Below, one piece after another: positions 20,233 through 63,643 of a stretch of DNA of 64,000 nucleotides (within the stretch, counting starts at the first letter, position 1; the number at the start of each line of letters is the position of its first letter). The stretch covers positions 23,560,001 to 23,624,000 of the forward strand of contig NC_042997.1 of the NCBI RefSeq assembly GCF_006345805.1, written 5' to 3'. This DNA is from Octopus sinensis (Eukaryota). The translations under genes were made by a program, and so were the position numbers. The notes under the pieces are model-generated. The model saw only the letters and a list, made by a program, of their open reading frames with translations. It had not been told where the DNA came from and did not search any database.

Positions 20233-22772
20233 ACATATATACGACGGGCTTCTTTCAGTTTCTGCCTACCAAATCCACTCACAAGGTCTTGATCGGCCTG
20301 AGGCTATAGTAGAAGACACTTGCTCAAGGTGCCACGCAGTGGGACTGAACTCGGAACCACGTGGTTGGTAAGCAAGCTACTTACTACACAGCCATTCCTA
20401 TTCTCAAATTATCTGTGAAAGTATGCTCAAGTTTGAGACTTTTTGATACTGTTTTATTTGTAAAGGGAACTGGTTGCTTCTTTACACTTTTGGGGTGCAA
20501 CACAATTTCCTTTCTTTTTGTTTCTAGAAACTACCAGTCAGGAACGAAACGCAAGTTTAAGAATATATACAATTCTTTATTCTCTTATTCAACAATGAAA
20601 CACGATGGTATACTGGTATCCATCTAGTTCAACACAGCAAGGCTGAATTCTAACGTTTGTAAGCTTCTCACAACAATTCAGCATTAATAGAACAGGTTAA
20701 ATCCTAAGCGTCTGGGACAGGAGAATAGGCTGATCACACGTATGAAAATACGTCCTTTCTCTTCTATCGCCGTGTCTCAAGTCCCCGACGCTATTAAGGA
20801 ACGCTATAGAATTTCTTCTTCAGTCTCTAGTGCATGTGCATGAGGGAACTTCCTTATGCCTTTCCAGAAGGTCCCAACCCCGCACACGCACACTGAAGAA
20901 GGACGCTCCGCACACGCACACCGAAGAATGACGTTGCGTGTGCGCACACTGGAACATGACATCACTACATATTAAATGAGAAATCAAATAATGATTGAAA
21001 TCGATTGAAATGATTGAAATGTGTTAAGCCCAATCATGTCAGCATCAACAAATGAGACACATATTACCGTATGCAACAATTACAGCTATAAATATATTAT
21101 CTAATCATCATCAACATCATCATGTGATACATATATATGTCCTACCCATGCCAGCATGGAAAATAGATGTATAATGATGATTGTGTGCGTGTGTGTGTAT
21201 ACTTGTATCTTCTTGTTTTGACATCACCTTATAGTTGTAAATCAGTGTCAGTCATTACCAATATTCTTCAAAAACATGTCTGGGCATGAAGAAATATTAC
21301 ATTGTTTGGAAACAGGTAAGGGTTGACAACAGGAAGGGCATTTGTCTATAAAAAATCTGTCTCAATAAATGTATGACCCATACAACCATGGAAAAGTGGA
21401 CACTAAAAGTGTGTGTGCATTGTTACTGTCTCCTTGCCTTGACTTCATGTGATAGTTGTAAAATGAGTATCACCATCAGGCAAGTAGTAACTTTCATTTC
21501 TAATCTTCTGTGAAAACATCTGCTCATGATGCATGTGTACGAACAGCCATGCTACATGGCAGTGAAACATGGGCCGTGACTGCTGAGGACATGCGTAAGC
21601 TCGCGAGGAATGAAGCCAGTATGCTCCGATGGATGTGTAATGTCAGTGTACATACTCGACAGAGTGTTAGTACCTTGAGAGAAATGTTGTACCTAAGAAG
21701 CATCAGTTGTGGTGTGCAAGAAAGACGATTGCGCTGGTATGGTCATGTGGCGAGAATGGATGAAGATAGGTGTGTGAAAAAGTGCCAATCCCTAGCAGTT
21801 GAGGGAACCCGTGGAAGAGGTAGACCCAGGAAAACCTGGGACGAGGTGGTGAAGCACGACCTTCGAACTTTAGGCCTCACTGAGGAAATGACCAGCGACC
21901 GAGACCTTTGGAAATATGCTGTACGTGAGAAGACCAGGCAGGACGAGTGAGCCCAGCCCACTTATGCATGCCTTTCCTCCCTTGGACACAAAGACCTGTT
22001 GAGGCAAGCAAAGTTGATATCGAACCTCATCCGACGACAGGCACCCATGCCAACCCCCTTTGCTTGCGAAGACATGTTGGGGCAAGTGAAATCGAAATCG
22101 GAATTGAAATTGAACCAATCCTATGACTGGCACCCGGCAGATGCCAGGACCCCTGGACTGGTGGTACGTAAAAAGCACTATCCGAATCGTGGCCGATGCC
22201 AGCGCCGCCTCGACTGGTTTCCTGCTGGTGGCACGTAAAATGCACCAATCCGACTGTGGCTGTTGCCAGCCTCGCCTGGCACGTGTGCGGGTGGCATGTA
22301 AAAAGCACCCACTACACTCACGGAGTGGTTGGCGTTAGGAAGGGCATCCAGCTGTAGAAACATTGCCAGATAAGACTGGAGCCTGGTGCAGCCTTCTGGC
22401 TTCCCAGATCCCTGGTCGAACCGTCTAACCTATGCTAGCATGGAGAACGGACGTTAAACGATGATGATGATGATAAAATATTAGCTTACTTGGAAATATG
22501 TGGGAGTTGGCAACAAGTAGGGCATGCAACTCTATAAAATCCTCAACAAATACTATCTGACCAATTCAAGCATAGAAAGGCAGACATTAAAACAATGATT
22601 ATATATATACAGGCACAGGAGAGGCTGTGTGGTAAGTAGCTTACTTACCAACTACATGGTTCTGGGTTCAGTCCCACTACGTGACACCTCGGGCAAGTGT
22701 CTTCTACTATAGCCTTGGGCTGACCAAAGCCTTGTGAATGGATATGGTAGACGGAAACTGAAAGAAGCTTAT

Positions 22773-22814
<42 letters not shown>

Positions 22815-25800
22815 CATACATACATTACGTGCGGGTGGCACGTAAAAAGCACCCACTACACTCACGGAGTGGTTGGCGTTAGGAAGGGCATCCAGCCATA
22901 GAAACACTGCCAGATCTGACTGGGCCTGATGAAGCCTTCCGGCTTCACAGACCCCAGTTGAACCGTCCAACCCATGCTAGCATGGAAAACGGACGCTAAA
23001 TGATGATGATGATGATGATGATGTATGTATGTATGTATGTTTGTTTGTTTCCCCAACATCGCTTGATAACTAATGCTTGTGTGTTTACGGTTCGGTAAGA
23101 GACCAATAGAATAAGTACTACGCTTATAAAGAATAAGACCTGGGGCCGATTTACTTGACTAAAGGTGGAGCCCCAGCATGGCCACAGCCAAATGACTGAA
23201 ACAAGTAAAAGAATATATATATATATATATAGCTAAACATCTTAGAAATTACATACCAAAAACCATGTAGCACACATGAAATTGTGTGGTCTTGGTTGGT
23301 CAAAACCAACTCAATATCTTGTCTGAAAGAAACAAATAAATATCTAGGTGTTAACATTTTAAAATATTATCAGATGGGCAGAAGAAAGTTGGTTTCAAAG
23401 AAAATACACAATGAGAAAGCATTCAATAATCTTAGAAGAATATTAAGGAGATGATGATGATGATAAACAGCAACACAAATTAATGTTATAGGATGGACAG
23501 GTTAACAAAATGTCATTTTTCCATGAATCTCAAAGCCACTTGCACCTCTACATTTATGAGATCCAACAATTTTTGAGACTATATTAAGTATACTAGAAGA
23601 TAAGAATAATTAAGTAATGGAAGTATTGACCAATGTATAGCTGAGGAACAAGGGCATGAATAAAAATGATGGCTAAGGAATGTACAACTCTTGTTATGCC
23701 GGTAAAATGATTTTAACAGAGAGATCAAAGGCTTGAGAAAAAGCTGGAATAAATATTGGACCTCACAGATAACCAAGTTTCATGAGGAAATTACTACATT
23801 ACAAAGTTTATCATGGTTAAAAGTAGACATAAAAATGATGATGATGATGGCAGTAGTGATGATAACAATGACGATGATTTATCAGATATATTTAGAAATA
23901 CTAGCTTCAAATTTTGGCACAAAGCCAGCAATTTGGGGGGTGGGGAAAGTCAACCTTGGTGAAACTTGATCTCAGAACGTAAAGTCAGACAAAATGCCAC
24001 TAAGAATTCTGCCAGGCATGCTAATGATCCTGCCTTGATATATTTAGAAATATTAACTCTCCAAATTCTTGATTACTTACCCTTGATATTTGACATCATT
24101 GATTTGGTAACGATTATATAATGAACACACAGGAGAACAAGTCAGTGGATTATCTTTGGAACTGAAAACAATAAATCATGATTAATAAATAGAACAGTAA
24201 TCAAAATTCAAAATAGAAAGGAAAAAAGCTGATGTAAAAGAAAAGTTAACATACGTTTTTGCTTTAGATTTGAAAGGAGAAAGATTTTTTATATCATCAC
24301 AGAATTCATCATCAAAGTCAAATGATGAATTCCACTGAGAAAGTTCAATATTATTTTCTTCTTCATCAAGTTTGCTTTGTGGTTCAGATGAAATATTGCT
24401 ATTGCTCACACAAGAAATATGTTTTATCTTGGGAACTGGAGAGAATGAGGTAGACGAGTTAGGTTTGTCTTGAATGTGTTTCAAATTAACATCCACTAAA
24501 TTTGCATTGTTATCATTTTTACTAGTATCATTCAGACTAATACCAGTGGATGTTTGCATATTTACATCATTGGAATGATTACCTTTCATGTCTGGAAATA
24601 TATTACTTTGAATATGGTTAGGGTTAATGAGGTTGTTTGATAATCCCTTATCACTGGAATTTATTTCTTTAAGAATTTCAGATAATATTTCATTATCATT
24701 AATAACAGATCCATTTTCAATACAAGGTTCACTTTTTGGAATTTTTTCCGTATTATTCTTTACTTCAGTCATAATTTGTTTTCCTTTAGATAAGTTTTGG
24801 CTTTTAGCAACAGGAATTTCTGCAAGAATTTCAGACAGAAATGTATCATTTGTATTATTTAATTTTTTAGGGACCATATTTGTTTTTGTCCCCAACCAAT
24901 CAAACACTTTATTTTTAGTATTACTACCATCGTTTTTTCTCAAAGTAGAAACACTTAAATTATTTTTAACATTAGACTTTTTAAGTTCATTACAAGCACT
25001 CGAATGCTTCAAATTCTTTGGAAAATTTTGTATTGGGCTTTTTAAAGAATCATTTTGCTCCCAAACATCATTTGGGTCAGGGTTTAAATTTTCCCACATA
25101 GCTAACTGCTCATCTGAATAGGCTTCACTAAAACTTTGATTTTCTTGCGTATCGTTTTCATTATCAAGAAATAAGTTAGATAACTCAATGCTACATCCAG
25201 TATTAAGTGATAGTTCAGTTTTATTAAATTCACTGCTGAGGGAGCGTTTTGATAATGGTGAACAACCTGAAACTGCTAACCGTTTAACAGATGTTCCGGA
25301 CAAACCAGTGTAATTTTTTACAGGGGTCAAAGGCTTATTAATTGGTTCTGCTAATTTCATTGCAGTATATTCTACAATACTGTCTTTTTTCTGAAGCGAT
25401 TCAGCCTTCTTCATAGATTTCTTTAAAATCTTAGACTTTAGTTTACTTTTACAATCTGCTTTTTTATTTATTCGGCTTTCCACTGTACTTTCTAAATTGG
25501 AAGAGGAAGAAAGAAAACTGCGTGCAAAAGATTTTTTTTGTATTCTCCCAAGAGTATCTGACTCGAAACAATGACTAGTTTCAGGCTGCTTTGAAAATAT
25601 TGGAGAAGTAGATTTTTCAGGAAAATTAGAAATGTTATGGTTAGGAGAAACAGAGCAAGAAAATATTTCCATTTCAGACTTTTCTTCGCTTCCTGGAATG
25701 TCTGTATTATGTTGAGGAGAGTTTTGAACAAATTTTCCATTGCCATCAAATGCATTTGCTTTTTTGATACAAGTCTTTTTAACTGGTGTTTCAAGAATAA

Positions 25801-26362
25801 TGTTGGAATCATCAAGATTAACAGTTTCTGCATTCATAGATTCTGACAGATTGGAACAACTTTGCAGAGAGCATATACTTAAAGTAGTTAAATTATCAGA
25901 AGCACCGTCATTCTTTGCACAGGTCTGATGATGAGAGACTTCAGAAATTTCATCTGATTTGTGAAGATGAACAGTTTCCTCTTTTACTGATTTCAATATG
26001 CCTGAAGTAGTTGGGAGAGGATATGGACCAAAATTAGTTAAATCAGAAACAGGAGATCTTTTAGAACAAGATCCTTCAAGTTGTATATCAGGAATTGTAT
26101 TTGATTCATTAATGTCTGTGATTTTCTGTTTTTGACCACCATACATTTTAAACAGCAATAGATCAGTGGAGGTCTGACATGAAACAGGTGGCTTTTTGGG
26201 ACTTTTAGAAATTTCTGTTTGGCTGCATGCTTTAAATTGACTATTTGTAAAATTTTCTGGTTGTTCTGCCACATAAACAGTTGAGGCCTTTTTTGACAGC
26301 CGTAATCGGTTTTTGAAATTTGGTTTTCCAACAACAGAAAACATGCTTTTATTTGAATTATT
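826..26362 (-). CDS. DNA2: DNA replication ATP-dependent helicase/nuclease DNA2, multi-exon, partial (3' helicase exons lie left of the window; 5'-most exon not identified)
   Basis: 16 exons joined by GT..AG introns with consistent phases. The translation contains DNA2 motifs: [87 protein letters not shown] and CSKCPHLLSC (Fe-S cluster cysteines). Confidence 0.95.
1311..1415 (-). CDS. DNA2: DNA2 exon (EKKGECISNLQFCG...FKRHTYS)
   Basis: atttcAG acceptor, GTAAGA donor, 105 nt; EK.G.CI.NL motif. Confidence 0.9.
2414..2599 (-). CDS. DNA2: DNA2 exon (FSLDVGNMTK...HLSQSHINFFIHWCVMIEFE...IWCSTGIDR)
   Basis: tttccAG acceptor (the in-phase one of two nearby AGs), GTTTGT donor, 186 nt; HL...H..FF..W...E motif. 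Confidence 0.88.
4389..4560 (-). CDS. DNA2: DNA2 exon ([12 protein letters not shown]...CSKCPHLLSCSIYQ)
   Basis: ttaacAG acceptor, GTAAGT donor, 172 nt; CxxCxxxxxC Fe-S motif. Confidence 0.95.
6359..6479 (-). CDS. DNA2: DNA2 exon (VTLYTMMMSDRREDPKEGLLLYLKD...NKR)
   Basis: ttccAG acceptor, GTATAA donor, 121 nt. Confidence 0.93.
7707..7787 (-). CDS. DNA2: DNA2 exon ([27 protein letters not shown])
   Basis: caacAG acceptor, GTAATA donor, 81 nt; ELK catalytic motif. Confidence 0.95.
9280..9322 (-). CDS. DNA2: DNA2 exon ([14 protein letters not shown])
   Basis: ctgtAG acceptor, GTAAGT donor, 43 nt; contains the catalytic Asp of the PD-(D/E)xK nuclease. Confidence 0.95.
9980..10777 (+). mobile_element. 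Internally deleted mariner transposon
   Basis: TIRs (gtatcaaaaagtttctggact vs accaggaacattttgatacc). N-terminal EQRVNMKFCIKLGKSTTETLNML and C-terminal LHPP..PD...HLFPKMK..LKGR with stop codons. Confidence 0.85.
11348..11416 (-). CDS. DNA2: DNA2 exon ([23 protein letters not shown])
   Basis: gattcAG acceptor, GTAAGT donor, 69 nt; DIEE.IWSP motif. Confidence 0.93.
12441..12548 (-). CDS. DNA2: DNA2 exon (YGHGTDESVVLAAVLKYIPNIVKWIEHHTNFMKQQ)
   Basis: tttccAG acceptor, GTAAGA donor, 108 nt; Y-x-P..W pattern. Confidence 0.9.
12946..13031 (-). CDS. DNA2: DNA2 exon (VLRNKIFKEKEILLLTKSIMKRKYILHE)
   Basis: tctccAG acceptor, GTAAGA donor, 86 nt, in phase. Confidence 0.85.
15975..16037 (-). CDS. DNA2: DNA2 exon ([21 protein letters not shown])
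   Basis: tttgcAG acceptor, GTTAGT donor, 63 nt; contains the nuclease histidine. Confidence 0.92.
16758..16782 (-). CDS. DNA2: DNA2 25-nt micro-exon (AVLNERFR)
   Basis: gtttcAG acceptor, GTTAGT donor; supplies the conserved AVL..F segment and restores phase between the flanking exons. Confidence 0.85.
17508..18180 (-). mobile_element. CR1-clade LINE 3' fragment with (AACT)n tail
   Basis: LSYEERLK.L.LYSLEKRR..GDLI, RLRGHS.KL and WNKLP. Confidence 0.9.
19003..19503 (+). repeat. RTE 3'-UTR-derived repeat with ~60-bp internal tandem units
   Basis: Same sequence family as 22000-22475. Other copies lie at ~6755-7000(-), 18345-18815(+), 22826-23023(+), 38224-38420(-), 38600-38915(+), 39350-39520(-) and 55690-56060(+). 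Confidence 0.85.
19576..19740 (-). CDS. DNA2: DNA2 exon (CYSYVAVGDIVHV...[19 protein letters not shown])
   Basis: ttaccAG acceptor, GTAAGT donor, 165 nt; contains the first Fe-S cysteine. Confidence 0.95.
21510..22475 (+). mobile_element. RTE-clade LINE 3' end (RT C-terminus, 3' UTR, (GAT)n tail)
   Basis: HGSETW, LRWYGHVARM and GRGRPRKTW, contiguous with the common repeat that ends in gatgatgat. Confidence 0.9.
23257..23322 (-). CDS. DNA2: DNA2 exon (QDIELVLTNQDHTISCVLHGFW)
   Basis: ctttcAG acceptor, GTATGT donor, 66 nt; matches the C-x-L-x-x-x-W segment of the DNA2 OB fold. Confidence 0.9.
24081..24161 (-). CDS. DNA2: DNA2 exon (SKDNPLTCSPVCSLYNRYQINDVKYQG)
   Basis: ttttcAG acceptor, GTAAGT donor, 81 nt; NRY motif at the start of the conserved region. 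Confidence 0.85.
24255..26362 (-). CDS. DNA2: DNA2 large N-terminal exon (~700 aa, S/N/K-rich, probably disordered)
   Basis: 720-aa ORF 24182-26344. Acceptor ttttcAG at 26363-26364 lies 18 nt upstream of the ATG, in frame. Donor AC|GTATGT at 24253-24254; phase matches the next exon. Confidence 0.85.
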
Positions 26363-44110: not shown

Positions 44111-44622
44111 ATGGCCTGGTCAGCCTGTAATGACATGCATAAGATCTGGTCATCAAATCTAAGTAGAGACTTCAAACTTGAAATCTTCAAAGCCACAGTC
44201 GAACCAATTCTACTATATGGCTCAGAAACCTGGACGTTATCAAAGAAGCTTGAGAGGCGGTTGGATGGAACCTACACTCGCCTCCTTATGAGAGCTCAAA
44301 ATCTCTCGTGGAAGCGCCATCCAACCAAAATGCAAATATATGGGAAACTACCACCTGTGTCATCTCTTGTGAAAAGTAGGAGAGTCCAGTTTGCTGGACA
44401 TTGTTGTAGAGCTGAAGAAGAGGTAATTTCTACTCTTCTCCTCTGGAAGCCATCTACTCGCAATACCAGAGGGCGCACACTCTCCTACCCTGATGTAATC
44501 TCCAGGGATACAGGCATCCAGCAGCAGGACCTCCATAATGCCATGATGGACCGTGAAGTCTGGCATAGCACGATAAATTCCATTGTCTCGATCACGGTCG
44601 AACAATGATGATGATGATGATG
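44111..44622 (+). mobile_element. RTE-like LINE 3' end (different family)
   Basis: VEPILLYGSETW and R.QFAGHC motifs; (GAT)n tail directly after the stop. Confidence 0.85.
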
Positions 44623-45806
44623 AATATATCTATTGATGATCAATTTAATGTTGTTGTTCATACAAACTTAGAATGAAAATCATTCTTGAGTCACTAGAAA
44701 GAGTAGCCAAGTCCCAATTGATTCCTACTTACCGTTTTGGAAAAGAATACTTTGGATTATGTAGTTTGGAACTCTTGCTATGGTAAAGAGATGTGATGGT
44801 CGTCTCTAGGCTGCATCTCTGTCTCACTATTTTACACCTTTTTGCTATCTCATTGGATGTGTGTGTATGTGTGTGTGTGTGTGTGTGTGTGGTACTATGT
44901 CTGTAATTCAGTTAGGTAGTTAGTGACAACTTTTGAGTAGTAGGTAGAGAACTCACCATTGTTACTAGGGCATGTCGATTTGCTTTACATGAGACCCAAG
45001 CTCAGCTAGCTTCGACAGACACTACATAGAATGGGCCCATTTGTATTTAGGATTGTGAACCAATGCATGTTTTTATTGACAAAATGAATCTCCCAAGATA
45101 CAATAGCTGTTTCAACATATGATTTCACATCAAGAAGCTTGCAAACCAAATACAAATGAGAATACATTCATGCATGCATGCACACACACACATACATGCA
45201 CACATGAATGATGGCTGTCCACTCATGATCAAAGAAGACGATCACTGATCTCTATGAACATTATACACTCGGACAAAATTTCACTTTATGAGTGTGAGTG
45301 TGAGTCTATAGTGTCACAATCATACCATCTAATTACATTCTAAGACACTACATAAACATGACAACCAATAAATTTAAGGGAAGATACATGAACATATGCA
45401 CTCCTTCTGGTGTAGAGACAGAAAAATCTCCAAATCCCTGTTCTGCTTCAACTGAAGACAATGGTACCATCAACATGACTTATTCTACAATGCATAAAGC
45501 ATCCTTACATGATTCCTCCTTACTCTGGAGCAATGTCCCTAAGAATCTGCACATATTCCTCCAATCTGCACTATCCAATTATAGGAAAACTAAGCTTTCT
45601 TATTGTTGCCACAAAAGGCACATCCTGTTAATGATTTTCAAACCATTGGATATTGATATGCAACCCTAGGCAAATTCATGTGTAATCTGACACCACGATG
45701 CCAGTTAACTCCTCCCATGGCAACTGCTGTCACTGAAAAAAACCCACATCCTGCAAAATGCTGGCCAAGTGACACCAAGATTTTGCCTGCTTTACCACAT
45801 GTAGCA

Positions 45807-46179: not shown

Positions 46180-47609
46180 TCTAATATAAAAAGCAGTTGT
46201 TGCTGAAATATCACACCCAGCAGAATGTCATCTGTGTGATACCACTATCATGTTTGCTTCCTATAAATGAACTGATGTTGGTATGAGAGCAAAAACAACA
46301 AGATCACTCAAACTGACCATTGGAGGCTTAAATATCTCAGCCCTGAAGCTATTTCAAAATTATTTAAAATTCTCTTCACTCTCTTCTTGAATATCTGATG
46401 ATGTGAAAATGTTCTTCATTCCTAAAATTTTAAGTAATGTGGAGTTCTATCAAAGACAGTGACAGCAGTTGCCATGTGAGGAGTTAACTGGCATCATGGT
46501 GTCCGGTTATACATGAATTTTCCTAGGGTTGCATATCAGTAGCCAATGGTTTGAAAATCATTAACAGGGTGTGTCTTTTGTGGCAACAATAAGAGTTCTG
46601 TTAAAGAAATATAACTCGAACTGAATATATTGGGTGATACCTTCTTATGTTTGTTCACCCATTTCCAGATATCTACACACACATGTATGTGTGTGTATAT
46701 ATATCATGCATACACATACATATTTCCTTTCGCAGACTCTCGGCTTACATCTTTTATTTGCTCTTCTCCTCTCTAAAGCATTCCATTCCATTTTGCCGTA
46801 ATTTTCCTTAGATCAACTTCTACCAGTAATTTATGACTGCTTTAACTTATATGGCATCCATTAACTATTTCCACATTACTTGATGTAGAAACAAAAGCCT
46901 TTCTTTTTTCCCTACGATAATATTTGTGCCATTTAATCTTTCCTGTCAACAGAAAGCATTTTTGAGTAAAGTTGAAAACATATTCTCAAATCATATTTTC
47001 TATAAATTCATTTTAGTTCTTAAGATGTATGTTATGTTACTGTATCTACAAGGTCCAATAAAAAAAACATTAGGACTAGTGCTATAAAAAGAAAACTACA
47101 ATACATATCAATTTGGTATTTAATTTCTTTGGAAATAGTGCCATTATGTAGACATATACTTTATCAAATGTCATTTCAATTGGTGAAAGAATTTTTGAGT
47201 GAGTAGCTGTCTCATACAATTAAAGAGATCCTGTTCAGCTGAAACCTGATCTTTTTGAGATGACCAGACACTAAGAATGAATATTCCAATAATGAGACCA
47301 GTACTTAACTGCTAATCTGTTTCATAGACTTTGTAAAGGTGAAAGATATTGTTGAACCTGTGTGTATCATATTTAATGTAAATACATAAAAAAAGTAAAT
47401 TTACTGCAGTATTTATCTAAAGATAATATTTCATATGGACAAGCTGCATTTAAAAATACAATATATATTAAAGACAGATGAAAATTGTTCTAGCAGCAGC
47501 TGGTGAGTATGCTAGATGCATTTCTCTCTTGTTGAGCATTGTCAATGGCACCTACTCAAAGCCACAAATTTCATAAGGTTGGCTCTGATTACATGCTATT
47601 GATAGTATC

Positions 47610-47826: not shown

Positions 47827-48810
47827 GTATCCAACAAGACATGAATACATCTAGCATTCTCATCAACCACTGTTAGGATGATTTTTTTTTCTGCCTCTGA
47901 TAAATACTGCATATTGAAACACAGCATATCCAGATGAGGTATTATCTCTGGATGAACACTGCAGGAAATTTGCCTTTTGCAATGTATTTATATTACATAT
48001 AATACATAGATTGATATATATATATATATATATGTTTGTTTATATCTTGCTTAATTTTTGCAAATTTTTTTTTATATGGAAATGTTAGTTTGTAAATATT
48101 AAATAAAGCCCCATCACTAGAATTTCAGTAAGACAACAAAAATTTAAAGGTATATAAAGATTTCTTCATCGATTCTTGTTCTCCTTATAGGCAGAACTTT
48201 CAGAGTACACATTAGATAACTCTTTACTCCTTGAGAATGCCAATTCTATTAGATTATTACTTAGACATTTAGTAGCATAACTACACACATGCACATGTTG
48301 TATGTATTTATGTAAATGTAGAAGGTATAGTGCTTGTTAACTTTTCAAAAGACTTGTAATACTACAGTTACTAAATCAATGTAATTCTTTAATCAAAATC
48401 CAAGATTAAGTTACCAGAGGTTAACAACAGGGCTCAAGAACTTTCAATGTCTACATTTAAAGCAAAGCTGATAAAAGACAGATGCAATTAACACACGTAA
48501 TGGTTAAATATTTACTGAAATACTTTATTAATATAAACTGTAATGAAACATACAAGCAAGCATTGATTTCACTTTATTGAACCAGTAAATATTTACAGGC
48601 AACAATATATTATTAAAATAAAATTGCTAAGAAAAGATATTTGAAAGGGTGTAATATTTTTTTTTTGTAAATGTATGACAAATACAAGTTGATAATATTG
48701 ATTTAGATTAATGCTGGTTGATAATCTTTCATTGGATAGATATGACCATAATCCTGCACAATTACAACAACTATAATGACTTAAGTTACTCTACTAAAAA
48801 ATATTCTAAA

Positions 48811-49517
48811 CTAGCAGTATCGCCCGGCGTTGCTCGGGTTCGTTTTCACCCTTTAGAATTGGAATCTTTGAAAAGTAAAAATTTTGCATTATGTAGCTTG
48901 TTATACTCTTTAAGTGAACATTTTTCTGGTTGAAATACACCGAAAAATGCCGACACAACAGTAAAAATATAAAAAATAGGGATTTTCATAGTAAAAAAGC
49001 CCCTTATTGATGTAAATAATCTTTGGTGTTAACATGGTCTGATTTGAATTTTCTCTTCTATGGCAGGAAGTGCAAGTCTTCTATCATACTCTCAATTTTG
49101 GTCAACTTGCACCGCAGGGTTTCGGAGGAGAAGAGCAAATAAAAGATGTAAGCCGAGAGTCTGCGAAAGGAAATATGTATGTGTATGCATGATATATATA
49201 CACACACATACATGTGTGTGTGTGTAGATATCTGGAAATGGGTGAACAAACATAAGAAGGTATCACCCAATATATTCAGTTCGAGTTATATTTCTTTAAC
49301 AGAACTCTTATTGTTGCCACAAAAGGCACACCCTGTTAATGATTTTCAAACCATTGGCTACTAATATGCAACCCTAGGCAACCTTACACCACGATGCCAG
49401 TTAACTCCTCACATGGCAACTGCTGTCACTGTCTTTGATAGAACTCCACATTACTTATAAGTTGAAGGCTACCAAACCTGCCATACACAGACAACTTCAG
49501 CTTTATATATAGAGAGA
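48811..49517 (-). mobile_element. Non-autonomous Helitron carrying an internal copy of 46433-46770
   Basis: 5' TC, 3' hairpin (cccgagcaacgccggg) plus CTAG, inserted between A and T with no TSD. The exact empty site gcaaattta|tttagaat is present in the duplicate at ~57249-57266. Confidence 0.9.
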
Positions 49518-49597
49518 TAAATTTGCTCACTTACATTATCTATATAATGCAATGTAATATTCCATATGAGGAAAATCTTTGACAGGGCAATATCATC

Positions 49598-50752
49598 TTA
49601 TATTGTAGGGTTTATTACTTTACCAATGAAATGAATCATTTCAGTTTCGTTGTGAACAATTAGAAATATGAATGGGTGATTTACATCAAATTGCATATCA
49701 ACAGTTTTTACGCCGTCAATCACAAACATTCCGAATGCAGCCGCAGCTTCTGTTCCTTTTTCATCAACATTAACAAATGCTTTGTGAAACATTTCACTGG
49801 CATAAATATTGTTTTCACTATCAGTCATTCCAGATAAATCAGCTTTTCGAGGATCAAAAATATCAGAGAGTCCAAGCTTTTTCAAAACATCACCCAAATT
49901 AAAACTACATTGTAAACGAAATTTTGGCATACTTAATTCTAAATACCTCTCTTGGAATTTTTTTCTGTTAACAATTTCTTTGAGAAATTGAGCATTAATC
50001 TCCTTCTCTAAAACAGCAAGACCATTGATTTCATTGGGAAGAATTACAAACATACTAAAAGATTTTTCTATATAAGGTAACTCAACAACTTTATAGTTCT
50101 TGCTTACTTTTGTATTAAAATATTCAGATATATACATAAAATCATGAGATACAGTCTTGTATGGACTTAAATAAAACTGTTTAGAGTATGTTGCTTTTTT
50201 GGGGAATTTTTCAGCCCATATTCCTTTAAAGTACACAGCATTAATAAGAAGTAGTACTGTATGAGGTGTCAAACTTCCACTTGGTAACAAATCAGTAATT
50301 TTATCATTTGTTTTATTCTCAACCCAATCATTAATAATAATTCTTGTTTTTTCTGCATTTTTTATAAAATCTACATTTTTAATATCTGAAAAGAAATATT
50401 TTACAATATTGATCTTGTATTTGTCTGAAATGTGGTATTTTTCATTAGCATATAAACAATTCACTGAATTGAATGTGATAAGTTTATCCAAGTTTTTCAA
50501 AAGTGAAAAATATTCTTTGAAAGCCAAAGCTACAGAATCTGGAGTTGAAGTTATCTTCAAAACATTTTCCAACTGTGTGGCAGAGTTTTGTCTTGCTCCA
50601 AAATAAACCATCGATAAAACAGTAGCAACACTGAATGGTGACATGAAAACATTTTCATTGGTTCCTGCAGCCACAGCTTGATAAAGATTGTTTGTAAAAT
50701 AATCTACTGAAGCAGCCAGGTCATTGATGTCTTGTCCCTTTTCTGAGTCCAT
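49598..50752 (-). CDS. Intracellular (ov-serpin-like) serine/cysteine protease inhibitor, 384 aa, single coding exon
   Basis: The ORF has NVFMSPFSV, INAVYFKGIW, DEKGTEAAAA hinge, NHPFIFLI and FIGKVINP. The likely start is MDSEK (ATG 50752), downstream of an acceptor ttcttcAG at 50770-50771; no signal peptide. The ORF-finder start at 50824 is probably intronic. Confidence 0.95.
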   Translation of the reverse strand: MDSEKGQDINDLAASVDYFTNNLYQAVAAGTNENVFMSPFSVATVLSMVYFGARQNSATQLENVLKITSTPDSVALAFKEYFSLLKNLDKLITFNSVNCLYANEKYHISDKYKINIVKYFFSDIKNVDFIKNAEKTRIIINDWVENKTNDKITDLLPSGSLTPHTVLLLINAVYFKGIWAEKFPKKATYSKQFYLSPYKTVSHDFMYISEYFNTKVSKNYKVVELPYIEKSFSMFVILPNEINGLAVLEKEINAQFLKEIVNRKKFQERYLELSMPKFRLQCSFNLGDVLKKLGLSDIFDPRKADLSGMTDSENNIYASEMFHKAFVNVDEKGTEAAAAFGMFVIDGVKTVDMQFDVNHPFIFLIVHNETEMIHFIGKVINPTI

Positions 50753-50963
50753 ATTATATATAGTAGTGTCTGAAGAATATAGATTACGAAAATAAAATAT
50801 ACAAAATAACTTTTTTGCAAACATTTCAAAATATTGTAGTATACATAAATATAAATGAAGACATCTATGAGAGCAAAGTCTGAAATATCTTATGTTGCAA
50901 CTTTAATTCCAAATATCATCAGTACCACATTCATCGGAATCTAAATTTTGCTGAACTCATATA

Positions 50964-54070: not shown

Positions 54071-54404
54071 CAACAATAACAATAATAATGTATGGTGACC
54101 ATGCAGAGTAAAGTATTAGAACTGTTTAATTGTTGGTAGTAATTTATGTACTGGTATGTGTCATTATAGAAATTACTCATCCACTTGTAGTAACAATGAA
54201 GTAGGAGAGTACCTCATCGTATAGAATGTATAGATCGGATTGAATTTCTAGGAATAAAGTACATATTACACCATTGACAATGTGCTTTGTTCATCAACAA
54301 ATATGGAAACCAAGTATATAAGAAGCGAGTCAGGAAGCCAATGTTTTGACAGAGTTCGTTAACGAAACATACACAAAATGTGTATGTGTGTCGAACTGGG
54401 TAGT

Positions 54405-54882
54405 GTCTGTCAATTAGGGTGTTTTTGAGTTCTTGTAGTCTAAAGTTCCTGGTATTTTGTTCTGACACTATTGTGCATATCCTTTTTGCAAGGTTGAAAG
54501 GGATGGTTGTTTTAGTGTCTCTTGGATGGCATGAATCAAAAAGTAGGTATTGTTTGGCATCTGTGGCTTTGTAAAATATTTCTGTTTCTATTGTTAGGTT
54601 AATTTTCTTAATCAGTATATCTAAGAATGGAAGCTCCTTTTGGTTGTACTCCATTGTGAACTGTATATTTGGGTTGATGCTGTTCAATAGGTTATTGAAT
54701 TTTAGGAGTTTATCTGTGTTTTCATTCCAGAGTATAAAACAGTTGTCCAGGAATCTTTTCCAAGTCTCTTTTATGTATTGAGAAAGGGGGTTTCCAAAGG
54801 TCGATAAAGATTCCTGGTATATAACTATTTCCAGGTAGCCCATTGTTAGGTTCGCAATGACTGGTGCTGCCCTTGTACCCAT
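54405..54882 (-). mobile_element. Penelope-like element reverse transcriptase fragment (degenerate)
   Basis: MGT..AP..ANL.M, WKRFLDNCF (YxDD-like motif with D to N), ELPFLDILI, YK.T...YL.F.SCHP and IPFNLAKRI. Confidence 0.85.
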
Positions 54883-55276
54883 ATATATATATAAGAAATT
54901 AAAAAAGGAAAATACACACTCTTTACATAGTTTTAATATAATTTTTAATATATCGACTGGTTTCGCTATTCATGATATTATGTTTTACTTATTTGAATAT
55001 GTATTTCTTCTTAAGAAGAAATTTTGTCCATGTTGTGTGTGATGATATTCACGAGTGAATGGCTGCACAAGTAGATAAATGAGGGGAGGTAATTGGTTAT
55101 CAATATTATTGTTATTGTTCTGGGTAAGGGAGATAACTGTTCAGCTTTCGGTAATGGGAGGGGAATATATATATATATGTACAGACAAAAGCAAGTTTTG
55201 AAAACCTTGTTTAGTGAGGGGATTTATGTACAGTGATGTAATTGTGAATTGAAATATGTAAAACGATAAAAGTTGG

Positions 55277-55630
55277 TTATGCGTGCATATTAAGACATGT
55301 TCTGTATTTTTCAATGAAAAAAGTTTCTTTATTTAAACGTTCTTGTGGAGAAATTGTGTCTTTGCACTGGTAGAAGGTGAAGACTATGAAATTTGGTTTG
55401 ATGTTATCCGCACATTTTTCTATTTGTTCACTGAGAGGAATTTGCCTGAATTGTGGGAAACGGATTTGCTCTTTATGTAGAGTGGTTCGCTTTCTCAAGG
55501 TCATACTTGTTTGTCCAATAAAGTTGTGCCTGCAACCCGAGCAGGTTATTACATAAATTAGGTTCTCAGAGGAACAAGTGAAACTAGTTTTAATTGTGAA
55601 CCTCTGTCCTTGTTTGAAAAGGAAATCCAA
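55277..55630 (-). mobile_element. Penelope-like (Neptune-type) GIY-YIG endonuclease fragment
   Basis: FTCSSENLIYVITCSGC...FIGQT...LRKR...H and ERLNKETFFI. Confidence 0.85.
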
Positions 55631-56872: not shown

Positions 56873-57170
56873 ATAGTTCTTGCTTACTTTTGTATTAAAA
56901 TATTCAGATATATACATAAAATCATGAGATACAGTCTTGTATGGACTTAAATAAAACTGTTTAGAGTATGTTGCTTTTTTGGGGAATTTTTCAGCCCATA
57001 TTCCTTTAAAGTACACAGCATTAATAAGAAGTAGTACCGTATGATTTGTCAAACTTCCACTAGGTAACAAATCAGTAATTTTATCATTTGTTTTATTCTC
57101 AACCCAATCATTAATAATAATTCTTGTTTTTTCTGCATTTTTTATAAAATCTATATTTTCAATATTTGAA
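56873..57170 (-). pseudogene. Serpin gene fragment (~99 codons, copy of 50093-50390)
   Basis: Near-identical to the mid-CDS of the serpin (DFIKNAEK...SKNY); truncated at both ends. Confidence 0.92.
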
Positions 57171-57171
57171 A

Positions 57172-59345
57172 TATAAGATGATATTACCTTGTCAAAGATT
57201 TTCCTCTTATGAAATATTACATTGCATTATGTATATAATGTAAGTGAGCAAATTTATTTAGAATATTTTTTAGTAGAGTAACTTAAGTCATTATAGTTGT
57301 TGTAATTGTGCAGGATTATGGTCATATCTATTCAATTAAAGATTATAAACCAGCATTAATCTAAATCAATATTATCAACTTGTATTTGTCATACATTTAC
57401 AAAAAAAAAAAATATTACACCCTTTCAAATATCTTTTCTTAGCAATTTTATTTTAATAATATATTGTTGCCTGTAAACATTTACTGGTTCAATAAAGTGA
57501 AATCAATGCTTGCTTGTATGTTTCATTACAGTTTATATTAATAAAGTATTTCAGTAAATATTTAACCATTATGTGTGTTAATTACATCTGTCTTTTATCA
57601 GCTTTGCTTTAAATGTAGACATTGAAAGTTCTTGAGCCCTGTTGTTAACCTCTGGTAACTTAATCTTGGATTTTGATTAAAGAATTACATTGATTTAGTA
57701 ACTGTGGTATTACAAGTCTTTTGAAAAGTTAACAAGCACTATACCTTCTACATTTACATAAATACATACAACATGTGCATGTGTGTAGTTATGCTACTAA
57801 ATGTCTAAGTAATAATCTAATAAAATTGGCATTCTCAAGGAGTAAAGAGTTATCTAATGTGTACTCTGAAAGTTCTGCCTATAAGGAGAACAAGAATCGA
57901 TGAAGAAATCTTTATATACCTTGAAATTTTTGTTGTCTTACTGAAATTCTAGTGATGGGGCTTTATTTAATATTTACAAACTAACATTTCCATATAAAAA
58001 AAAAAATTGCAAAAATTAAGCAAGATATAAACAAACATATATATATATATCAATCTATGTATTATATGTAATATAAATACATTGCAAAAGGCAAATTTCC
58101 TGCAGTGTTCATCCAGAGATAATACCTCATCTGGATATGCTGTGTTTCAATATGCAATATTTATCAGAGGCAGAAAAAAAATCATCCTAACAGTGGTTGA
58201 TGAGAATGCTAGATGCATTCATGTCTTGTTGGATACTATCAATAACATGTAATCAGAGCCAACCTTATGAAATTTGTGGCTTTGAGTAGGTGCCATTGAC
58301 AATGCTCAACAAGAGAGAAATGCATCTAGCATACTCACCAGCTGCTGCTAGAACAATTTTCATCTGTCTTTAATATATATTGTATTTTTAAATGCAGCTT
58401 GTCCATATGAAATATTATCTTTAGATAAATACTGCAGTAAATTTACTTTTTTTTATGTATTTACATTAAATATGATACACACAGGTTCAACAATATCTTT
58501 CACCTTTACAAAGTCTATGAAACAGATTAGCAGTTAAGTACTGGTCTCATTATTGGAATATTCATTCTTAGTGTCTGGTCATCTCAAAAAGATCAGGTTT
58601 CAGCTGAACAGGATCTCTTTAATTGTATGAGACAGCTACTCACTCAAAAATTCTTTCACCAATTGAAATGACATTTGATAAAGTGTGTGGCTACATAATG
58701 GCACTATTTCCAAAGAAATTAAATACCAAATTGATATGTGTTATAGTTTTCTTTTTATAGCACCAGTCCTGATGTTTTTTATTGGACCTTGTAGATACAG
58801 TAACATAACATACATCTTAAGAACTAAAATGAATTTATAGAAAATATGATTTGAGAATATGTTTTCAACTTTACTCAAAAATGCTTTGTGTTGACAGGAA
58901 AGATTAAATGGCACAAATATTATTGTAGGGAAAAAAGAAAGGCTTTTGTTTCTACATCAAGTAATGTGGAAATAGTTAATGGATGCCATATAAGTTAAAG
59001 CAGCCATAAATTACTGGTAGAAGTTGATCTAAGGAAAATTACGGCAAAATGGAATGGAATGCTTTAGAGAGGAGAAGAGCAAATAAAAGATGTAAGCCGA
59101 GAGTCTGCGAAAGGAAATATGTATGTGTATGCATGATATATATACACACACATACATGTGTGTGTGTAGATATCTGGAAATGGGTGAACAAACATAAGAA
59201 GGTATCACCCAATATATTCAGTTCGAGTTATATTTCTTTAACAGAACTCTTATTGTTGTCACAAAAGGCACACCCTGTTAATGATTTTCAAACCATTGGC
59301 TACTGATATGCAACCCTAGGCAAATTCATGTGTAACCTGACACCT
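57172..59345 (+). repeat. Inverted duplicate of the serpin 3' flank (about 49602 to 46498)
   Basis: Long colinear reverse-complement match, e.g. 57172 tataagatgata vs 49591-49602, and 59049-59345 vs 46498-46790. It lacks two segments present in the parent copy. Confidence 0.9.
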
Positions 59346-63109: not shown

Positions 63110-63643
63110 ATGGCTGCATCAGGTTTGCCTTCATTCACAGGGGATGCGGGTCTGTGGCTTGCCCAGGTGGAGTCCCATTTTGCCGCACATGCCGTTCCTC
63201 CACAGCAGCAGTTACATCTACTATACTCGAGTTTGCCTTGCCGACTCGCCACATCGGTCAGGGATCTCATAATGAGTCCCCACCCTGACGCCACATACGC
63301 ATCAGTAAAGGCCGAAATCCTCTGCCGCAACACGCGGTCGGAGGAGAGTCAGTTCAATGAGCTGATGGCCGACGAGCAGTTGGGGGACAGGACTCCATCC
63401 CAGTTCCTGCTCCACCTAAGGGAGCTTAGCGGCAATGCAGCGGACGCGCCACTCTTACGGAAGATATTCTTTTCCAGGCTACCTGCCCACGTGCAGACAA
63501 TATTGGCCACGGCACTGGAGTCTGTGTCTGTAGACCAGATTGCCACGATAGCCGACAAAATATTAGAGTTATCGGGAACCATCTCCATCACGGTGCCTGT
63601 ACGCATGTACAGAGCCCCCTCCGACGAACAATTCATTAGCTGA
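63110..63643 (+). CDS. gag: Gypsy (Mag-like) gag, probably truncated
   Basis: W..QVE.HF, Y..VK..IL and LGDRTPSQFL..LREL motifs downstream of the LTR/PBS; it stops before any zinc knuckle. Confidence 0.8.
   Translation: MAASGLPSFTGDAGLWLAQVESHFAAHAVPPQQQLHLLYSSLPCRLATSVRDLIMSPHPDATYASVKAEILCRNTRSEESQFNELMADEQLGDRTPSQFLLHLRELSGNAADAPLLRKIFFSRLPAHVQTILATALESVSVDQIATIADKILELSGTISITVPVRMYRAPSDEQFIS

What the first reader, a model, noticed from the sequence alone, without database searches (positions are those of the whole stretch)
49672..49770. Cellular serpin with a CrmA-register P1-Asp loop: candidate caspase inhibitor
Seen: the loop reads EKGTEAAAA-FGMFVID-GVKTVDMQF-DVNHPF. Established: cowpox CrmA, a cross-class caspase-1/-8 inhibitor, reads TEAAAA-TCALVAD-CASTVTNEF-CADHPF (recalled from memory). 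The Asp (codon 49715-49717) has exactly the same spacing to the hinge and to the strand after the loop, i.e. the shortened CrmA-type loop. F-V-I-D|G also fits caspase preferences: bulky hydrophobic P4 as in YVAD, and small P1'. There is no signal peptide, so the protein would be cytosolic. Cellular serpins with P1 Asp are uncommon. Inference: this is an endogenous cephalopod anti-caspase (apoptosis or immune) serpin. Caveat: Phe replaces the usual Thr after the AAAA hinge and could slow loop insertion.
Basis: partly seen in the sequence, partly recalled or inferred. Interest (0 to 1): 0.85.

Follow-up and report, generated by a model that had tools for sequence, protein, structure and literature searches.

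The report
Octopus serpin with Asp-Gly loop
This is a real, intact octopus protease-inhibitor (serpin) gene with no secretion signal, copied from a cluster of secreted serpins on another chromosome; its bait loop was rebuilt around a conserved Asp-Gly pair, so it is a reasonable but unproven candidate inhibitor of Asp-cutting proteases such as caspases.

Summary
The loop, the coordinates and the Asp codon (49715-49717, minus strand) are exactly as described. The gene (49598-50752, minus) is a single-exon, 384-aa serpin (Pfam 1.9e-107) with a perfect inhibitory hinge (EKGTEAAAA) and a confident native-serpin model. Orthologues in O. vulgaris and O. bimaculoides keep Asp-Gly, while 7 of 15 loop residues differ.

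The "CrmA register" is not diagnostic. Glu331 to Asp346 is 16 residues, as the literature reports for crmA. But every octopus paralogue has the same spacing with other residues there, the overall loop length is the commonest among homologues, and PAI-2 aligns without gaps, putting its P1 Arg over Gly347. The proposed P4 is not conserved (Phe/Ser/Met).

The gene is a DNA-level copy of one cassette from a tandem array in which a shared signal-peptide exon splices onto alternative whole-serpin exons. The copy lost that exon, rebuilt its loop (Asn-Tyr to Asp-Gly) and evolves fast (dN/dS about 0.7, against 0.18 for the parent), yet its reading frame is preserved.

My estimates: Asp|Gly is the scissile bond about 0.35; caspase inhibitor about 0.2. 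Interest is moderate.

The parts
49598..50752 (-). Single-exon serpin CDS, 384 aa plus stop (stop codon 49598-49600; conserved start Met at 50750-50752, MDSEKGQ...)
   Evidence: ORF list. Pfam Serpin 1.9e-107. Identical 384-aa protein in the public collection. AlphaFold2 model with pLDDT 92 and pTM 0.91, native serpin fold.
50753..50824 (-). In-frame 5' extension giving the 408-aa ORF (Met at 50822-50824). Specific to this species and probably not translated as a conserved product.
   Evidence: O. vulgaris and O. bimaculoides have one A fewer in the A-run and an in-frame stop upstream (alignment).
50770..50800 (-). Retained splice acceptor (polypyrimidine tract plus AG at 50771-50770). It is homologous to the acceptor that joins the signal-peptide exon to each cassette in the parent array.
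   Evidence: Five-way DNA alignment. Identical in all three orthologues. The exon-1 donor and phase were read from L002.
49736..49762 (-). Hinge, P17-P9: Glu331-Lys-Gly-Thr-Glu-Ala-Ala-Ala-Ala339
   Evidence: Sequence. It matches the inhibitory consensus ExGTEAAAA (x = E/K/R) quoted in PMC8233489.
49691..49735 (-). Variable part of the reactive-centre loop, Phe340-Gln354. It is the hot spot of divergence between orthologues.
   Evidence: 7 of 15 residues differ between the window and O. bimaculoides, against 49 of 369 elsewhere (Fisher p=0.0025). AlphaFold pLDDT is below 50 for residues 336-346.
49712..49717 (-). Asp346-Gly347, the invariant core of the loop and the candidate scissile bond (16-residue register). 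Gly347 is the canonical (17-residue) P1 position.
   Evidence: Codons GAC GGC. Invariant in three species. PAI-2 P1 Arg aligns over Gly347.
49503..49597 (-). Proximal 3' flank or UTR, still homologous to the array cassettes
   Evidence: Alignment. In O. bimaculoides the homology continues for at least 700 nt past the stop, through an AATAAA, with no poly(A) tail.
49125..49500 (.). Repeat insertion into the 3' flank. Present in the window and O. vulgaris, absent in O. bimaculoides. Boundaries are approximate.
   Evidence: Other copies of the repeat lie at 46425-46771, 59069-59323 and 45598-45735.
56873..57171 (-). 299-bp fragment copy of the serpin CDS (aa 140-244), part of a scrambled local duplication upstream of the gene
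   Evidence: tblastn. blastn gives 97.7% identity to 50093-50391. Also present in O. vulgaris.

Best explanation
SHOWN: The gene is an intact, inhibitory-type serpin with no signal peptide. It is related to the 'leukocyte elastase inhibitor / serpin B3-like' genes of octopus. It arose when one whole-serpin exon ('cassette') was copied as DNA to another chromosome, before O. bimaculoides and O. vulgaris/sinensis split. The source was a tandem array in which one signal-peptide exon is spliced to alternative cassettes. The copy kept the cassette's own ATG and the now orphan splice acceptor. It lost access to the signal-peptide exon and left the clustering of array cassette bodies by species (which I read as concerted evolution). 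It accumulated amino-acid changes about twice as fast as its parent, yet its reading frame has been preserved. Its bait loop was rebuilt from ...Val-Val-Thr/Ser-Asn-Tyr-Met... to ...Ile/Thr-Asp-Gly-Val/Ile..., with Phe at P8 (unique among 105 homologues) and a second new Asp five residues further on.

INFERRED:
- It works as a classical suicide-substrate trap. The protease cleaves the loop, the loop inserts into sheet A, and the acyl- or thioacyl-enzyme is dragged along and distorted.
- The product stays in the cytosol.
- My committed guess for the scissile bond is Asp346|Gly347. This is a 16-residue P17-P1 segment, as reported for crmA, C1-inhibitor and alpha2-antiplasmin. The target would then be an Asp-specific protease.
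- A caspase (cross-class inhibition) is the first candidate, at about 0.2 overall. An Asp-specific serine protease or legumain is second.

The confidence figure applies to the Asp|Gly step. The 'shown' part I hold at about 0.85.
For: Serpin identity and inhibitory competence:
- Pfam match 1.9e-107.
- The hinge EKGTEAAAA equals the inhibitory consensus in PMC8233489.
- All 24 invariant columns of a 109-sequence alignment are retained.
- The AF2 model has pLDDT 92 with a disordered, exposed loop. Its best structural matches are native SCCA1, antithrombin and MENT.

Origin:
- The orthologues are single-exon genes on the ~200-225 Mb chromosome.
- The closest paralogues lie in arrays on a 54-55 Mb chromosome, with gene models that share one signal-peptide exon.
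- Homology covers about 150 bp of intron plus the acceptor upstream, and at least 700 nt downstream through AATAAA with no poly(A) tail.
- The three orthologues form a clade with 100% bootstrap, sister to the array cassettes.

No signal peptide:
- The upstream ATG is in frame only in the window.
- No signal-peptide exon was found in 13 kb upstream in the window, nor in 10-kb flanks of either orthologue.

Selection:
- dN/dS is 0.68-0.77, against 0.18 for the parent. The nonsynonymous excess has p=3e-4.
- The ORF is intact in three species. P(no stop | 92 substitutions) = 0.052. P(0 indels) = 0.0026 at the flank indel rate of 5.15 per kb.

For Asp|Gly specifically:
- Asp-Gly is invariant while 7 of the 11 central loop positions changed. 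The chance that both were spared is about 0.11 (hand calculation).
- The ancestral canonical P1 Tyr (TAT) was replaced by Gly (GGC), which needs three nucleotide changes. The neighbouring Asn (AAT) became Asp. That fits the reactive bond moving one residue towards the hinge, with a small P1' residue. I know of no protease class for which Gly is a good P1.
- Asp appeared in the same lineage that lost the secretion exon.
- A 16-residue register has precedent (PMC4493575).
- Caspases 3, 6, 7, 8 and 10 are expressed in O. vulgaris hemocytes (PMC4199593).
Against: - By homology the canonical P1 is Gly347, not Asp346. PAI-2 aligns ungapped with its P1 Arg over Gly347, and SERPINB3 aligns its Ser354 (P1 of the 354S/355S bond; PMC4136820) there too.
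- Paralogues show Met|Ser, Leu|Ser, Cys|Ser and Ala|Ser-Ala-Gln at that register.
- Asn or Asp at the 'P2' column recurs in paralogues that have good canonical P1 residues (Asn-Tyr, Asp-Leu).
- P4-P2 would be Phe-Val-Ile, Ser-Met-Ile and Met-Val-Thr in the three species. P4 is not conserved, and none has the P3 Glu that most caspases prefer (own knowledge).
- dN/dS between the window and O. bimaculoides is not significantly below 1 (Fisher p=0.14).
- No transcript-level evidence was available. The exact proteins occur only on genome contigs.
- Only three closely related species could be compared.
Confidence: 0.35

Rival explanations
1. Canonical or +1 register. The scissile bond is Gly347|Val348 (17 residues) or Val/Ile348|Lys/Ile349 (18 residues). 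Asp346 is then only a P2 or P3 subsite residue. The target would be an elastase- or chymotrypsin-like serine protease of hemocyte granules, gut or pathogens, or a papain-like cysteine cathepsin, as for other intracellular clade-B-like serpins such as SCCA1, MENT and SRP-6.
For: - Ungapped alignment with PAI-2 and SERPINB3 puts their P1 over Gly347.
- The recurrent X|Ser-Ala-Gln pattern of the paralogues lies at this register.
- Paralogues P0014-P0017 carry one extra residue and would use Val|Ser at an 18-residue register.
- Position 348 is Val / Val / Ile, a conserved beta-branched aliphatic that suits elastase-type S1 pockets.
- Gly at hinge+14 occurs in 17 of 105 homologues.
- The best sequence and structure matches include SCCA1 and MENT, which are cross-class inhibitors of papain-like proteases. 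SCCA1, hurpin and SRP-6 are reviewed in PMC7863939; MENT's activity is from my own knowledge.
Against: - To my knowledge, Gly is not a productive P1 for any characterised serpin target.
- This reading does not explain why Tyr became Gly and Asn became Asp and both then stayed fixed, while the flanking subsites (P4-P2 and P2'-P4' in the Asp|Gly register) drifted.
- The residue after Val/Ile348 is not conserved (Lys or Ile).
- For a papain-like target cleaving Asp|Gly, the P2 residue would be Ile / Ile / Thr. Thr is a poor fit to a hydrophobic S2 pocket.
Confidence: 0.3
2. Relaxed constraint. The orphaned cassette lost its secretory context and is drifting. The open reading frame survives, but the protein is a poor inhibitor or none, or has a non-inhibitory role. 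On this reading the Asp-Gly pair carries no functional meaning.
For: - dN/dS of 0.68-0.77 is not significantly different from 1 (p=0.14), while the parent cassette is at 0.18 (p=5e-12).
- CDS nucleotide identity to O. bimaculoides (91.7%) is barely above that of the flanks (88-92%).
- There are repeat insertions in the 3' flank and a scrambled duplication nearby.
- Phe at P8 is unique among 105 homologues.
- No transcript evidence was found.
Against: - The ORF is intact in three species, with joint probability of about 1e-4 under neutrality (0.052 x 0.0026).
- The hinge and all family-invariant residues are untouched.
- Window against O. vulgaris gives dN/dS 0.37.
- Divergence is concentrated in the loop (p=0.0025), as in serpins under diversifying selection, rather than spread evenly.
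Confidence: 0.15
3. Still secreted. The conserved acceptor at 50770-50771 is used to splice an undiscovered upstream exon that encodes a signal peptide. The serpin would then act outside the cell, for example on salivary, digestive or pathogen proteases, so caspases are irrelevant.
For: - The acceptor and polypyrimidine tract are perfectly conserved in three species.
- In the parent arrays the signal-peptide exon lies 5-32 kb upstream of its cassettes. The window covers only 13 kb upstream.
Against: - No homologue of the signal-peptide exon was found in the window or in the 10-kb flanks of either orthologue.
- The parent's exon is on a different chromosome.
- Public annotations give only signal-peptide-less products of 384 or 408 aa.
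- The region around the acceptor is no better conserved than neighbouring non-coding DNA, so its conservation proves nothing.
Confidence: 0.1

Closest known systems
Octopus 'leukocyte elastase inhibitor' / 'serpin B3-like' array cassettes (P0003 O. sinensis, P0004 O. bimaculoides)
   Same: 78% identical, the closest paralogues. They have the same single-exon body, the same start codon context, the same acceptor, the same loop length and the same ...MQFDVNHPF end of the loop.
   Different: They are array members spliced to a signal-peptide exon (413-aa secreted forms). Their loop is ...Val-Val-Ser/Thr-Asn-Tyr-Met..., P8 is Ser or Thr, and dN/dS is 0.18. The window gene is solitary on another chromosome and has no signal peptide. 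Its loop is Asp-Gly, P8 is Phe, and dN/dS is about 0.7.
Human clade B serpins SERPINB3/B4 (SCCA1/2) and PAI-2 (SERPINB2)
   Same: They are the best solved-structure matches (E 4e-66 to 1.5e-63, 31-35% identity, TM about 0.9). They lack a signal peptide, have the inhibitory hinge, and PAI-2 has the identical loop length.
   Different: Orthology is not implied, because prokaryotic serpins score nearly as well. The window gene has no CD-loop insertion. The reactive centres differ: Ser-Ser, Leu-Ser and Arg-Thr, against Asp-Gly-Val.
Cowpox virus CrmA / poxviral SPI-2 and Serp-2 (cross-class caspase and granzyme B inhibitors)
   Same: Asp lies 16 residues after P17 (PMC4493575). A small residue follows it. 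Hydrophobic residues precede it in two of the three species. Location is intracellular.
   Different: There is no special relatedness: viral serpins are 20-29% identical and rank below cellular ones. In octopus the 16-residue spacing is a family-wide trait. P4 is not conserved. Inhibition of any caspase is untested. CrmA is a 'minimal' serpin (PMC7863939), whereas this is a full-size one.
SERPINB9 (PI-9), the cellular inhibitor of granzyme B and weak inhibitor of caspase-1
   Same: It is a cytosolic clade-B-type serpin with an acidic residue at the reactive centre, and it protects cells from an Asp-specific protease (PMC4493575 and PMC7863939).
   Different: PI-9 uses Glu at the canonical 17-residue P1 (own knowledge). 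Here the canonical P1 is Gly and the acidic residue is one position earlier.

Membership tests
Serpin superfamily (PF00079) | Full-length match to the serpin profile, and the serpin fold | tested here: met
   Pfam 1.9e-107, positions 4-370 of 370. AF2 model with pLDDT 92. Foldseek E 1e-42, TM 0.88-0.93 to native serpins.
Inhibitory serpins | Hinge consensus P17-P9 ExGTEAAAA, with small residues at P12-P9 and Thr at P14 | tested here: met
   EKGTEAAAA at residues 331-339. Consensus as quoted in PMC8233489.
Inhibitory serpins | Forms an SDS-stable covalent complex with a target protease and undergoes the stressed-to-relaxed transition | not testable with these tools
   Needs recombinant protein.
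Intracellular (ov-serpin / clade-B-like) serpins | No cleavable N-terminal signal peptide | tested here: met
   The conserved product starts at MDSEKGQ/MDSAK. The upstream ATG is in frame only in the window. No signal-peptide exon was found nearby. No signal-peptide predictor was available, and splicing to a distant exon is not excluded.
Intracellular (ov-serpin / clade-B-like) serpins | Phylogenetic membership of vertebrate clade B | not tested
   There are only best-hit relations. Prokaryotic serpins are almost as close, so 'serpin B3' is an annotation label, not a demonstrated orthology.
CrmA-type cross-class caspase-inhibiting serpins (functional class) | Asp at P1 of the bond actually cleaved | not testable with these tools
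   Asp346 is present and conserved. Which bond is cleaved needs biochemistry.
CrmA-type cross-class caspase-inhibiting serpins (functional class) | P17-to-Asp segment of 16 residues | tested here: met
   Glu331-Asp346 is 16 residues; literature value. This is not discriminating, because all paralogues have the same spacing with other residues.
CrmA-type cross-class caspase-inhibiting serpins (functional class) | P4-P2 that fit a caspase subsite profile and are maintained | tested here: inconclusive
   Phe-Val-Ile, Ser-Met-Ile and Met-Val-Thr in the three species. P3 is hydrophobic in all three. P4 is not conserved.
CrmA-type cross-class caspase-inhibiting serpins (functional class) | Inhibits a caspase (thioacyl complex) | not testable with these tools
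Poxviral SPI-2 lineage | Closer sequence or structure relation to SPI-2/CrmA than to cellular serpins | tested here: not met
   Viral serpin models are 20-29% identical at E 1e-35 or worse. Cellular serpins are 31-35% identical at E 1e-43. CrmA chains are absent from the 60 best sequence hits.
Retrogene (processed copy) | Homology limited to the mature mRNA, ending in a poly(A) tract | tested here: not met
   Homology includes intron sequence and the acceptor. It runs at least 700 nt past the stop and beyond AATAAA, with no A-tail. It is therefore a DNA-level duplication.

The most novel reading that the evidence does not exclude
The first endogenous invertebrate serpin that inhibits caspases across protease classes. 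On this reading it was created when a cassette escaped from a secreted, hypervariable serpin array, lost its signal-peptide exon, and shifted its reactive bond one residue towards the hinge (Asn-Tyr to Asp|Gly). It would then have arrived independently at the same 16-residue, P1-Asp solution that poxviruses use.
Probability: 0.2. Interest if true: 0.7.

Novelty: new member of a known kind. Interest (0 to 1): 0.4.

Why it matters
Cellular regulators of caspases in invertebrates are thought to be IAP-type proteins. Serpins with a P1 Asp that block caspases are known from poxviruses, and mammalian PI-9 (P1 Glu) inhibits caspase-1 only weakly. Showing that an octopus cytosolic serpin traps caspases would add a new layer to the control of cell death or immunity in molluscs. 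It would also be a clean case of convergent evolution with a viral immune-evasion protein.

Independently of the target, the locus shows how serpin specificity evolves. One cassette left an array, changed compartment from secreted to cytosolic, and had its bait loop rebuilt. If none of this holds, it is simply one more fast-evolving member of a lineage-specific serpin expansion.

Tried and rejected
1. Retrocopy origin. I first suspected it because the gene is intronless and on another chromosome. I rejected it: the parent cassettes are themselves single exons, and homology includes intron, acceptor and post-poly(A)-signal DNA.

2. The 408-aa ORF as a product with a degenerate signal peptide. 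Rejected: it is in frame only in the window.

3. Search for a signal-peptide exon in the window and in both orthologous loci by blastn-short and tblastn. Only chance-level hits were found.

4. This was inconclusive: 1f0c_B and 1c8o_B align with a 1-residue length difference, and the alignments are not shown for ranks beyond 5. I did not write the viral sequence from memory.

5. Literature look-ups for the SCCA1 cleavage site and the crmA loop-length papers (PMC24842, PMC2253425, PMC2144729, and the PNAS DOI). None is held. From memory only, and unverified: cathepsins cleave SCCA1 one residue before the canonical P1, and crmA can use two adjacent bonds. I did not use these as evidence.

6. Open-literature search for cephalopod serpin loops or invertebrate caspase-inhibiting serpins. 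There is nothing specific. Only 'SerpinB10-like' qPCR and '6 serpin transcripts' in O. vulgaris were found.

7. L002 and L004 were not readable from scripts. I pasted two 1155-nt cassettes by hand for the dN/dS calculation.

9. Taspase-type Asp|Gly cleavage and legumain (Asn/Asp) were considered as targets. They are kept only as minor options, because no serpin is known to trap them (own knowledge).
Full report
**1. The observation**

The minus strand of window 49598-50824 is one uninterrupted ORF. 49715-49717 (gtc on +) is GAC = Asp346, numbered from the conserved start MDSEKGQ at 50752. 49712-49714 is GGC = Gly347.

The protein matches Pfam Serpin at E=1.9e-107 over the whole profile. The best solved relatives are human SERPINB3/B4, PAI-2, antithrombin, MENT and SERPINB1. 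An AlphaFold2 model built on 109 homologues has mean pLDDT 92 and pTM 0.91. Only the reactive-centre loop (residues 336-346) is of low confidence. The model superposes on native-state serpins with TM 0.88-0.93.

The hinge EKGTEAAAA equals the inhibitory consensus ExGTEAAAA (PMC8233489). So this is a real, structurally complete, inhibitory-type serpin.

**2. Whose gene it is**

The identical 384-aa protein sits on a 213-Mb contig. A 97%-identical orthologue is annotated in O. vulgaris (225-Mb chromosome) and an 85%-identical one ('serpin B3') in O. bimaculoides (200-Mb chromosome).

The O. vulgaris locus is collinear with the window at about 97% nucleotide identity. The O. bimaculoides locus is 88-92% identical, with rearrangements. 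I infer that the window is most likely O. sinensis. All three orthologues are single-exon genes of 1155 nt.

**3. Where it came from**

The next-closest proteins (75-78%) are 'leukocyte elastase inhibitor' isoforms encoded on a different, 54-55 Mb chromosome.

Reading those loci shows an unusual layout. One short exon encodes a signal peptide (MARII...QQTVS, donor gt, phase 1). Downstream lie several complete serpin 'cassettes', each a single exon. Each cassette is preceded by a polypyrimidine tract and AG, and carries its own ATG seven codons further on. Gene models in two species join the signal-peptide exon to alternative cassettes (413-aa secreted forms), or start at the cassette's own ATG (384-387-aa forms).

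The window gene is one such cassette:
- It shares the acceptor and about 150 bp of upstream intron with the array cassettes.
- In O. bimaculoides it shares at least 700 nt of downstream DNA, running through an AATAAA with no poly(A) tail.

It is therefore a DNA-level dispersed duplicate, not a retrogene.

A neighbour-joining tree with the loop excluded puts the three orthologues in one clade (100% bootstrap), sister to the array cassettes. The array bodies cluster largely by species, although their loops differ. I read that pattern as concerted evolution, which the dispersed copy escaped.

**4. Signal peptide**

No homologue of the signal-peptide exon exists in the 13 kb upstream within the window, nor in the 10-kb flanks of the orthologues.

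The 408-aa ORF of the window begins at an ATG inside the former intron. It is in frame only because of one extra A in an A-run. O. vulgaris and O. bimaculoides have an in-frame stop there.

Splicing to a more distant exon cannot be excluded, because the acceptor is intact.

**5. Is it functional?**

dN/dS (Nei-Gojobori):

| Comparison | dN/dS |
|---|---|
| window vs O. bimaculoides | 0.68 |
| O. vulgaris vs O. bimaculoides | 0.77 |
| window vs O. vulgaris | 0.37 |
| parent cassette, orthologous pair (P0003/P0004) | 0.18 |

The dispersed copy has twice the parent's nonsynonymous divergence (p=3e-4). Taken alone, it is not significantly below neutrality (p=0.14).

Against decay:
- 92 random substitutions would leave the frame free of stop codons only 5% of the time.
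- At the indel density of the flanks (5.15 per kb), zero indels in 1155 nt has p=0.0026.
- All family-invariant residues and the hinge are intact.
- The amino-acid differences are concentrated in the loop: 7 of 15 against 49 of 369, p=0.0025.

I conclude that the gene is maintained, with relaxed and/or diversifying selection.

**6. The loop in context**

| Species | Loop |
|---|---|
| window | FGMFVIDGVKTVDMQF |
| O. vulgaris | FGMSMIDGVKTVDMQF |
| O. bimaculoides | FGVMVTDGIIEIDMQF |

- Asp-Gly is invariant, and so is a second Asp five residues later.
- The Lys of an alternative Lys-Thr bond is not conserved.
- The closest parent loop is GMVV(S/T)NYM(S/L)RIGMQF. After the duplication Asn (AAT) became Asp, Tyr (TAT) became Gly (GGC, three changes), and P8 Thr/Ser became Phe.
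- Phe at P8 occurs only in these three proteins among 105 homologues (Thr 94, Ser 7, Phe 3, Asn 1).

**7. The 'CrmA register'**

Glu331 to Asp346 is 16 residues. PMC4493575 states that P17-P1 is almost always 17 residues, the exceptions with 16 being crmA, C1-inhibitor and alpha2-antiplasmin.

It is not diagnostic, for four reasons:
- Every paralogue has the same spacing with other residue pairs in the two columns: Asn-Tyr, Asp-Leu, Leu-Cys, Ala-Met, Phe-Ala, Pro-Cys, Met-Cys.
- The overall length from P15 to the conserved Pro (28) is the modal class of the homologues (32 of 105), so the loop is not shortened.
- PAI-2 aligns through the loop without a gap, with its P1 Arg over Gly347. SERPINB3 aligns its Ser354 there; its scissile bond is 354S/355S (PMC4136820).
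- Six paralogues show Met, Leu, Cys or Ala followed by Ser at that register, in most of them as Ser-Ala-Gln.

By homology, then, the canonical P1 is Gly347 and Asp346 is P2. The primed-side spacing to crmA could not be checked.

Viral serpins are more distant from this protein than cellular ones. Any resemblance to crmA would be convergent.

**8. Which bond?**

Sequence alone cannot decide. According to the summary in PMC4493575, the serpin mechanism tolerates a loop shortened by one or two residues. From my own recollection of the same loop-length work, it also tolerates slight lengthening. Asp|Gly (16), Gly|Val (17) and Val/Ile|x (18) are therefore all feasible.

For Asp|Gly:
- The pair is the only invariant core in a loop where 7 of the 11 central positions changed. 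The chance that both were spared is about 0.11.
- Replacing a good P1 (Tyr) by Gly makes sense if that position became P1'.
- The acidic residue appeared in the lineage that became cytosolic.
- Asp followed by a small residue is the classical caspase or granzyme B site (own knowledge).

Against Asp|Gly:
- The homology argument above.
- The unconserved P4.
- The lack of P3 Glu.
- The fast evolution of the loop even between the two sister species (Phe343Ser and Val344Met among only 11 differences). That looks more like an arms-race or relaxed serpin than a regulator of conserved endogenous caspases.

My estimates:

| Reading | Probability |
|---|---|
| Asp\|Gly is the scissile bond | about 0.35 |
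| ...of which a caspase is the target | about 0.2 overall |
| Canonical or +1 register (serine or papain-like protease target) | about 0.3 |
| Effectively drifting | about 0.15 |

The secreted-after-all rival (about 0.1) is listed separately. It concerns the compartment, not the bond, so it overlaps these readings.

**9. Comparison and novelty**

It is a member of the serpin superfamily and of the inhibitory class. It resembles intracellular clade-B serpins in lacking a signal peptide, though orthology with vertebrate clade B was not tested.

It is not a relative of the poxviral SPI-2/CrmA lineage. Whether it works like crmA is open. One defining feature (Asp at 16 residues) is met but non-specific. 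One (a maintained P4-P2 profile) is inconclusive. The decisive ones (scissile bond, caspase complex) cannot be tested here.

The open literature I could search holds nothing on cephalopod serpin loops or invertebrate caspase-inhibiting serpins. O. vulgaris hemocytes do express caspases 3, 6, 7, 8 and 10 and six serpin transcripts (PMC4199593).

**10. Verdict**

This is a new, fast-evolving member of a lineage-specific serpin expansion, with an interesting origin and an unusual Asp-Gly reactive centre. It is a reasonable but unproven candidate for an Asp-specific (possibly anti-caspase) inhibitor.

Noticed in passing
L002 10001-34308 (O. bimaculoides CM046619.1) and L004 10001-52514 (O. sinensis CM016877.1): The parent locus is a tandem array of at least 3-7 complete single-exon serpin cassettes behind one short signal-peptide exon. 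Gene models in two species join that exon to alternative whole-serpin exons, or start at each cassette's own ATG. The constant part is the signal peptide and the variable part is an entire inhibitor. Cassette bodies cluster by species, while the loops are hypervariable.
   Followed up: partly
window 56873-58063, paired with 48001-50391: Scrambled local duplication upstream of the gene. It holds a 299-bp CDS fragment (56873-57171, 97.7% identical to 50093-50391) next to inverted copies of the gene's downstream flank (48001-48810 = 58063-57257; 49517-49604 = 57257-57170). The fragment is also present in O. vulgaris (L003 3308-3607).
   Followed up: partly
window ~49125-49500; also 46425-46771, 59069-59323, 45598-45735: A dispersed repeat is inserted about 95 nt after the serpin stop codon in the window and O. 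vulgaris, but not in O. bimaculoides. It separates the CDS from the ancestral AATAAA, which may alter 3'-end formation.
   Followed up: partly
window 50796-50802 (A-run upstream of the CDS): One extra A, compared with O. vulgaris and O. bimaculoides, puts an intronic ATG (50822-50824) in frame. This produces the 408-aa ORF that is also present in public annotation.
   Followed up: yes
window 54214-55630 (-): Remnants of what looks like a Penelope-like retroelement between the gene and its fragment copy. One ORF has a GIY-YIG domain (55277-55630, Pfam 7e-5). An adjacent 222-aa ORF looks reverse-transcriptase-like by eye but has no Pfam hit.
   Followed up: partly
window 24182-26344 (-): A 720-aa open reading frame rich in Ser, Asn and Lys, with no Pfam match. 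It may be a large exon of an unrelated gene or a chance ORF in low-complexity DNA.
   Followed up: partly
window 63110-63643 (+); 21510-21950 (+); 44111-44608 (+); 17594-17941 (-): A DUF7041 ORF (Pfam 1.2e-11), and several short ORFs that look like C-terminal parts of retrotransposon proteins. The window is repeat-rich (GC 35.6%, many CA/TA microsatellites).
   Followed up: partly
window CDS vs L001, compared with L004 41360-42514 vs L002 23154-24308: Synonymous divergence between what I take to be the same two species is 0.11 at the dispersed locus but 0.19 at the array cassette. This suggests either different local mutation rates or non-orthologous or converted cassettes in the array.
   Followed up: no
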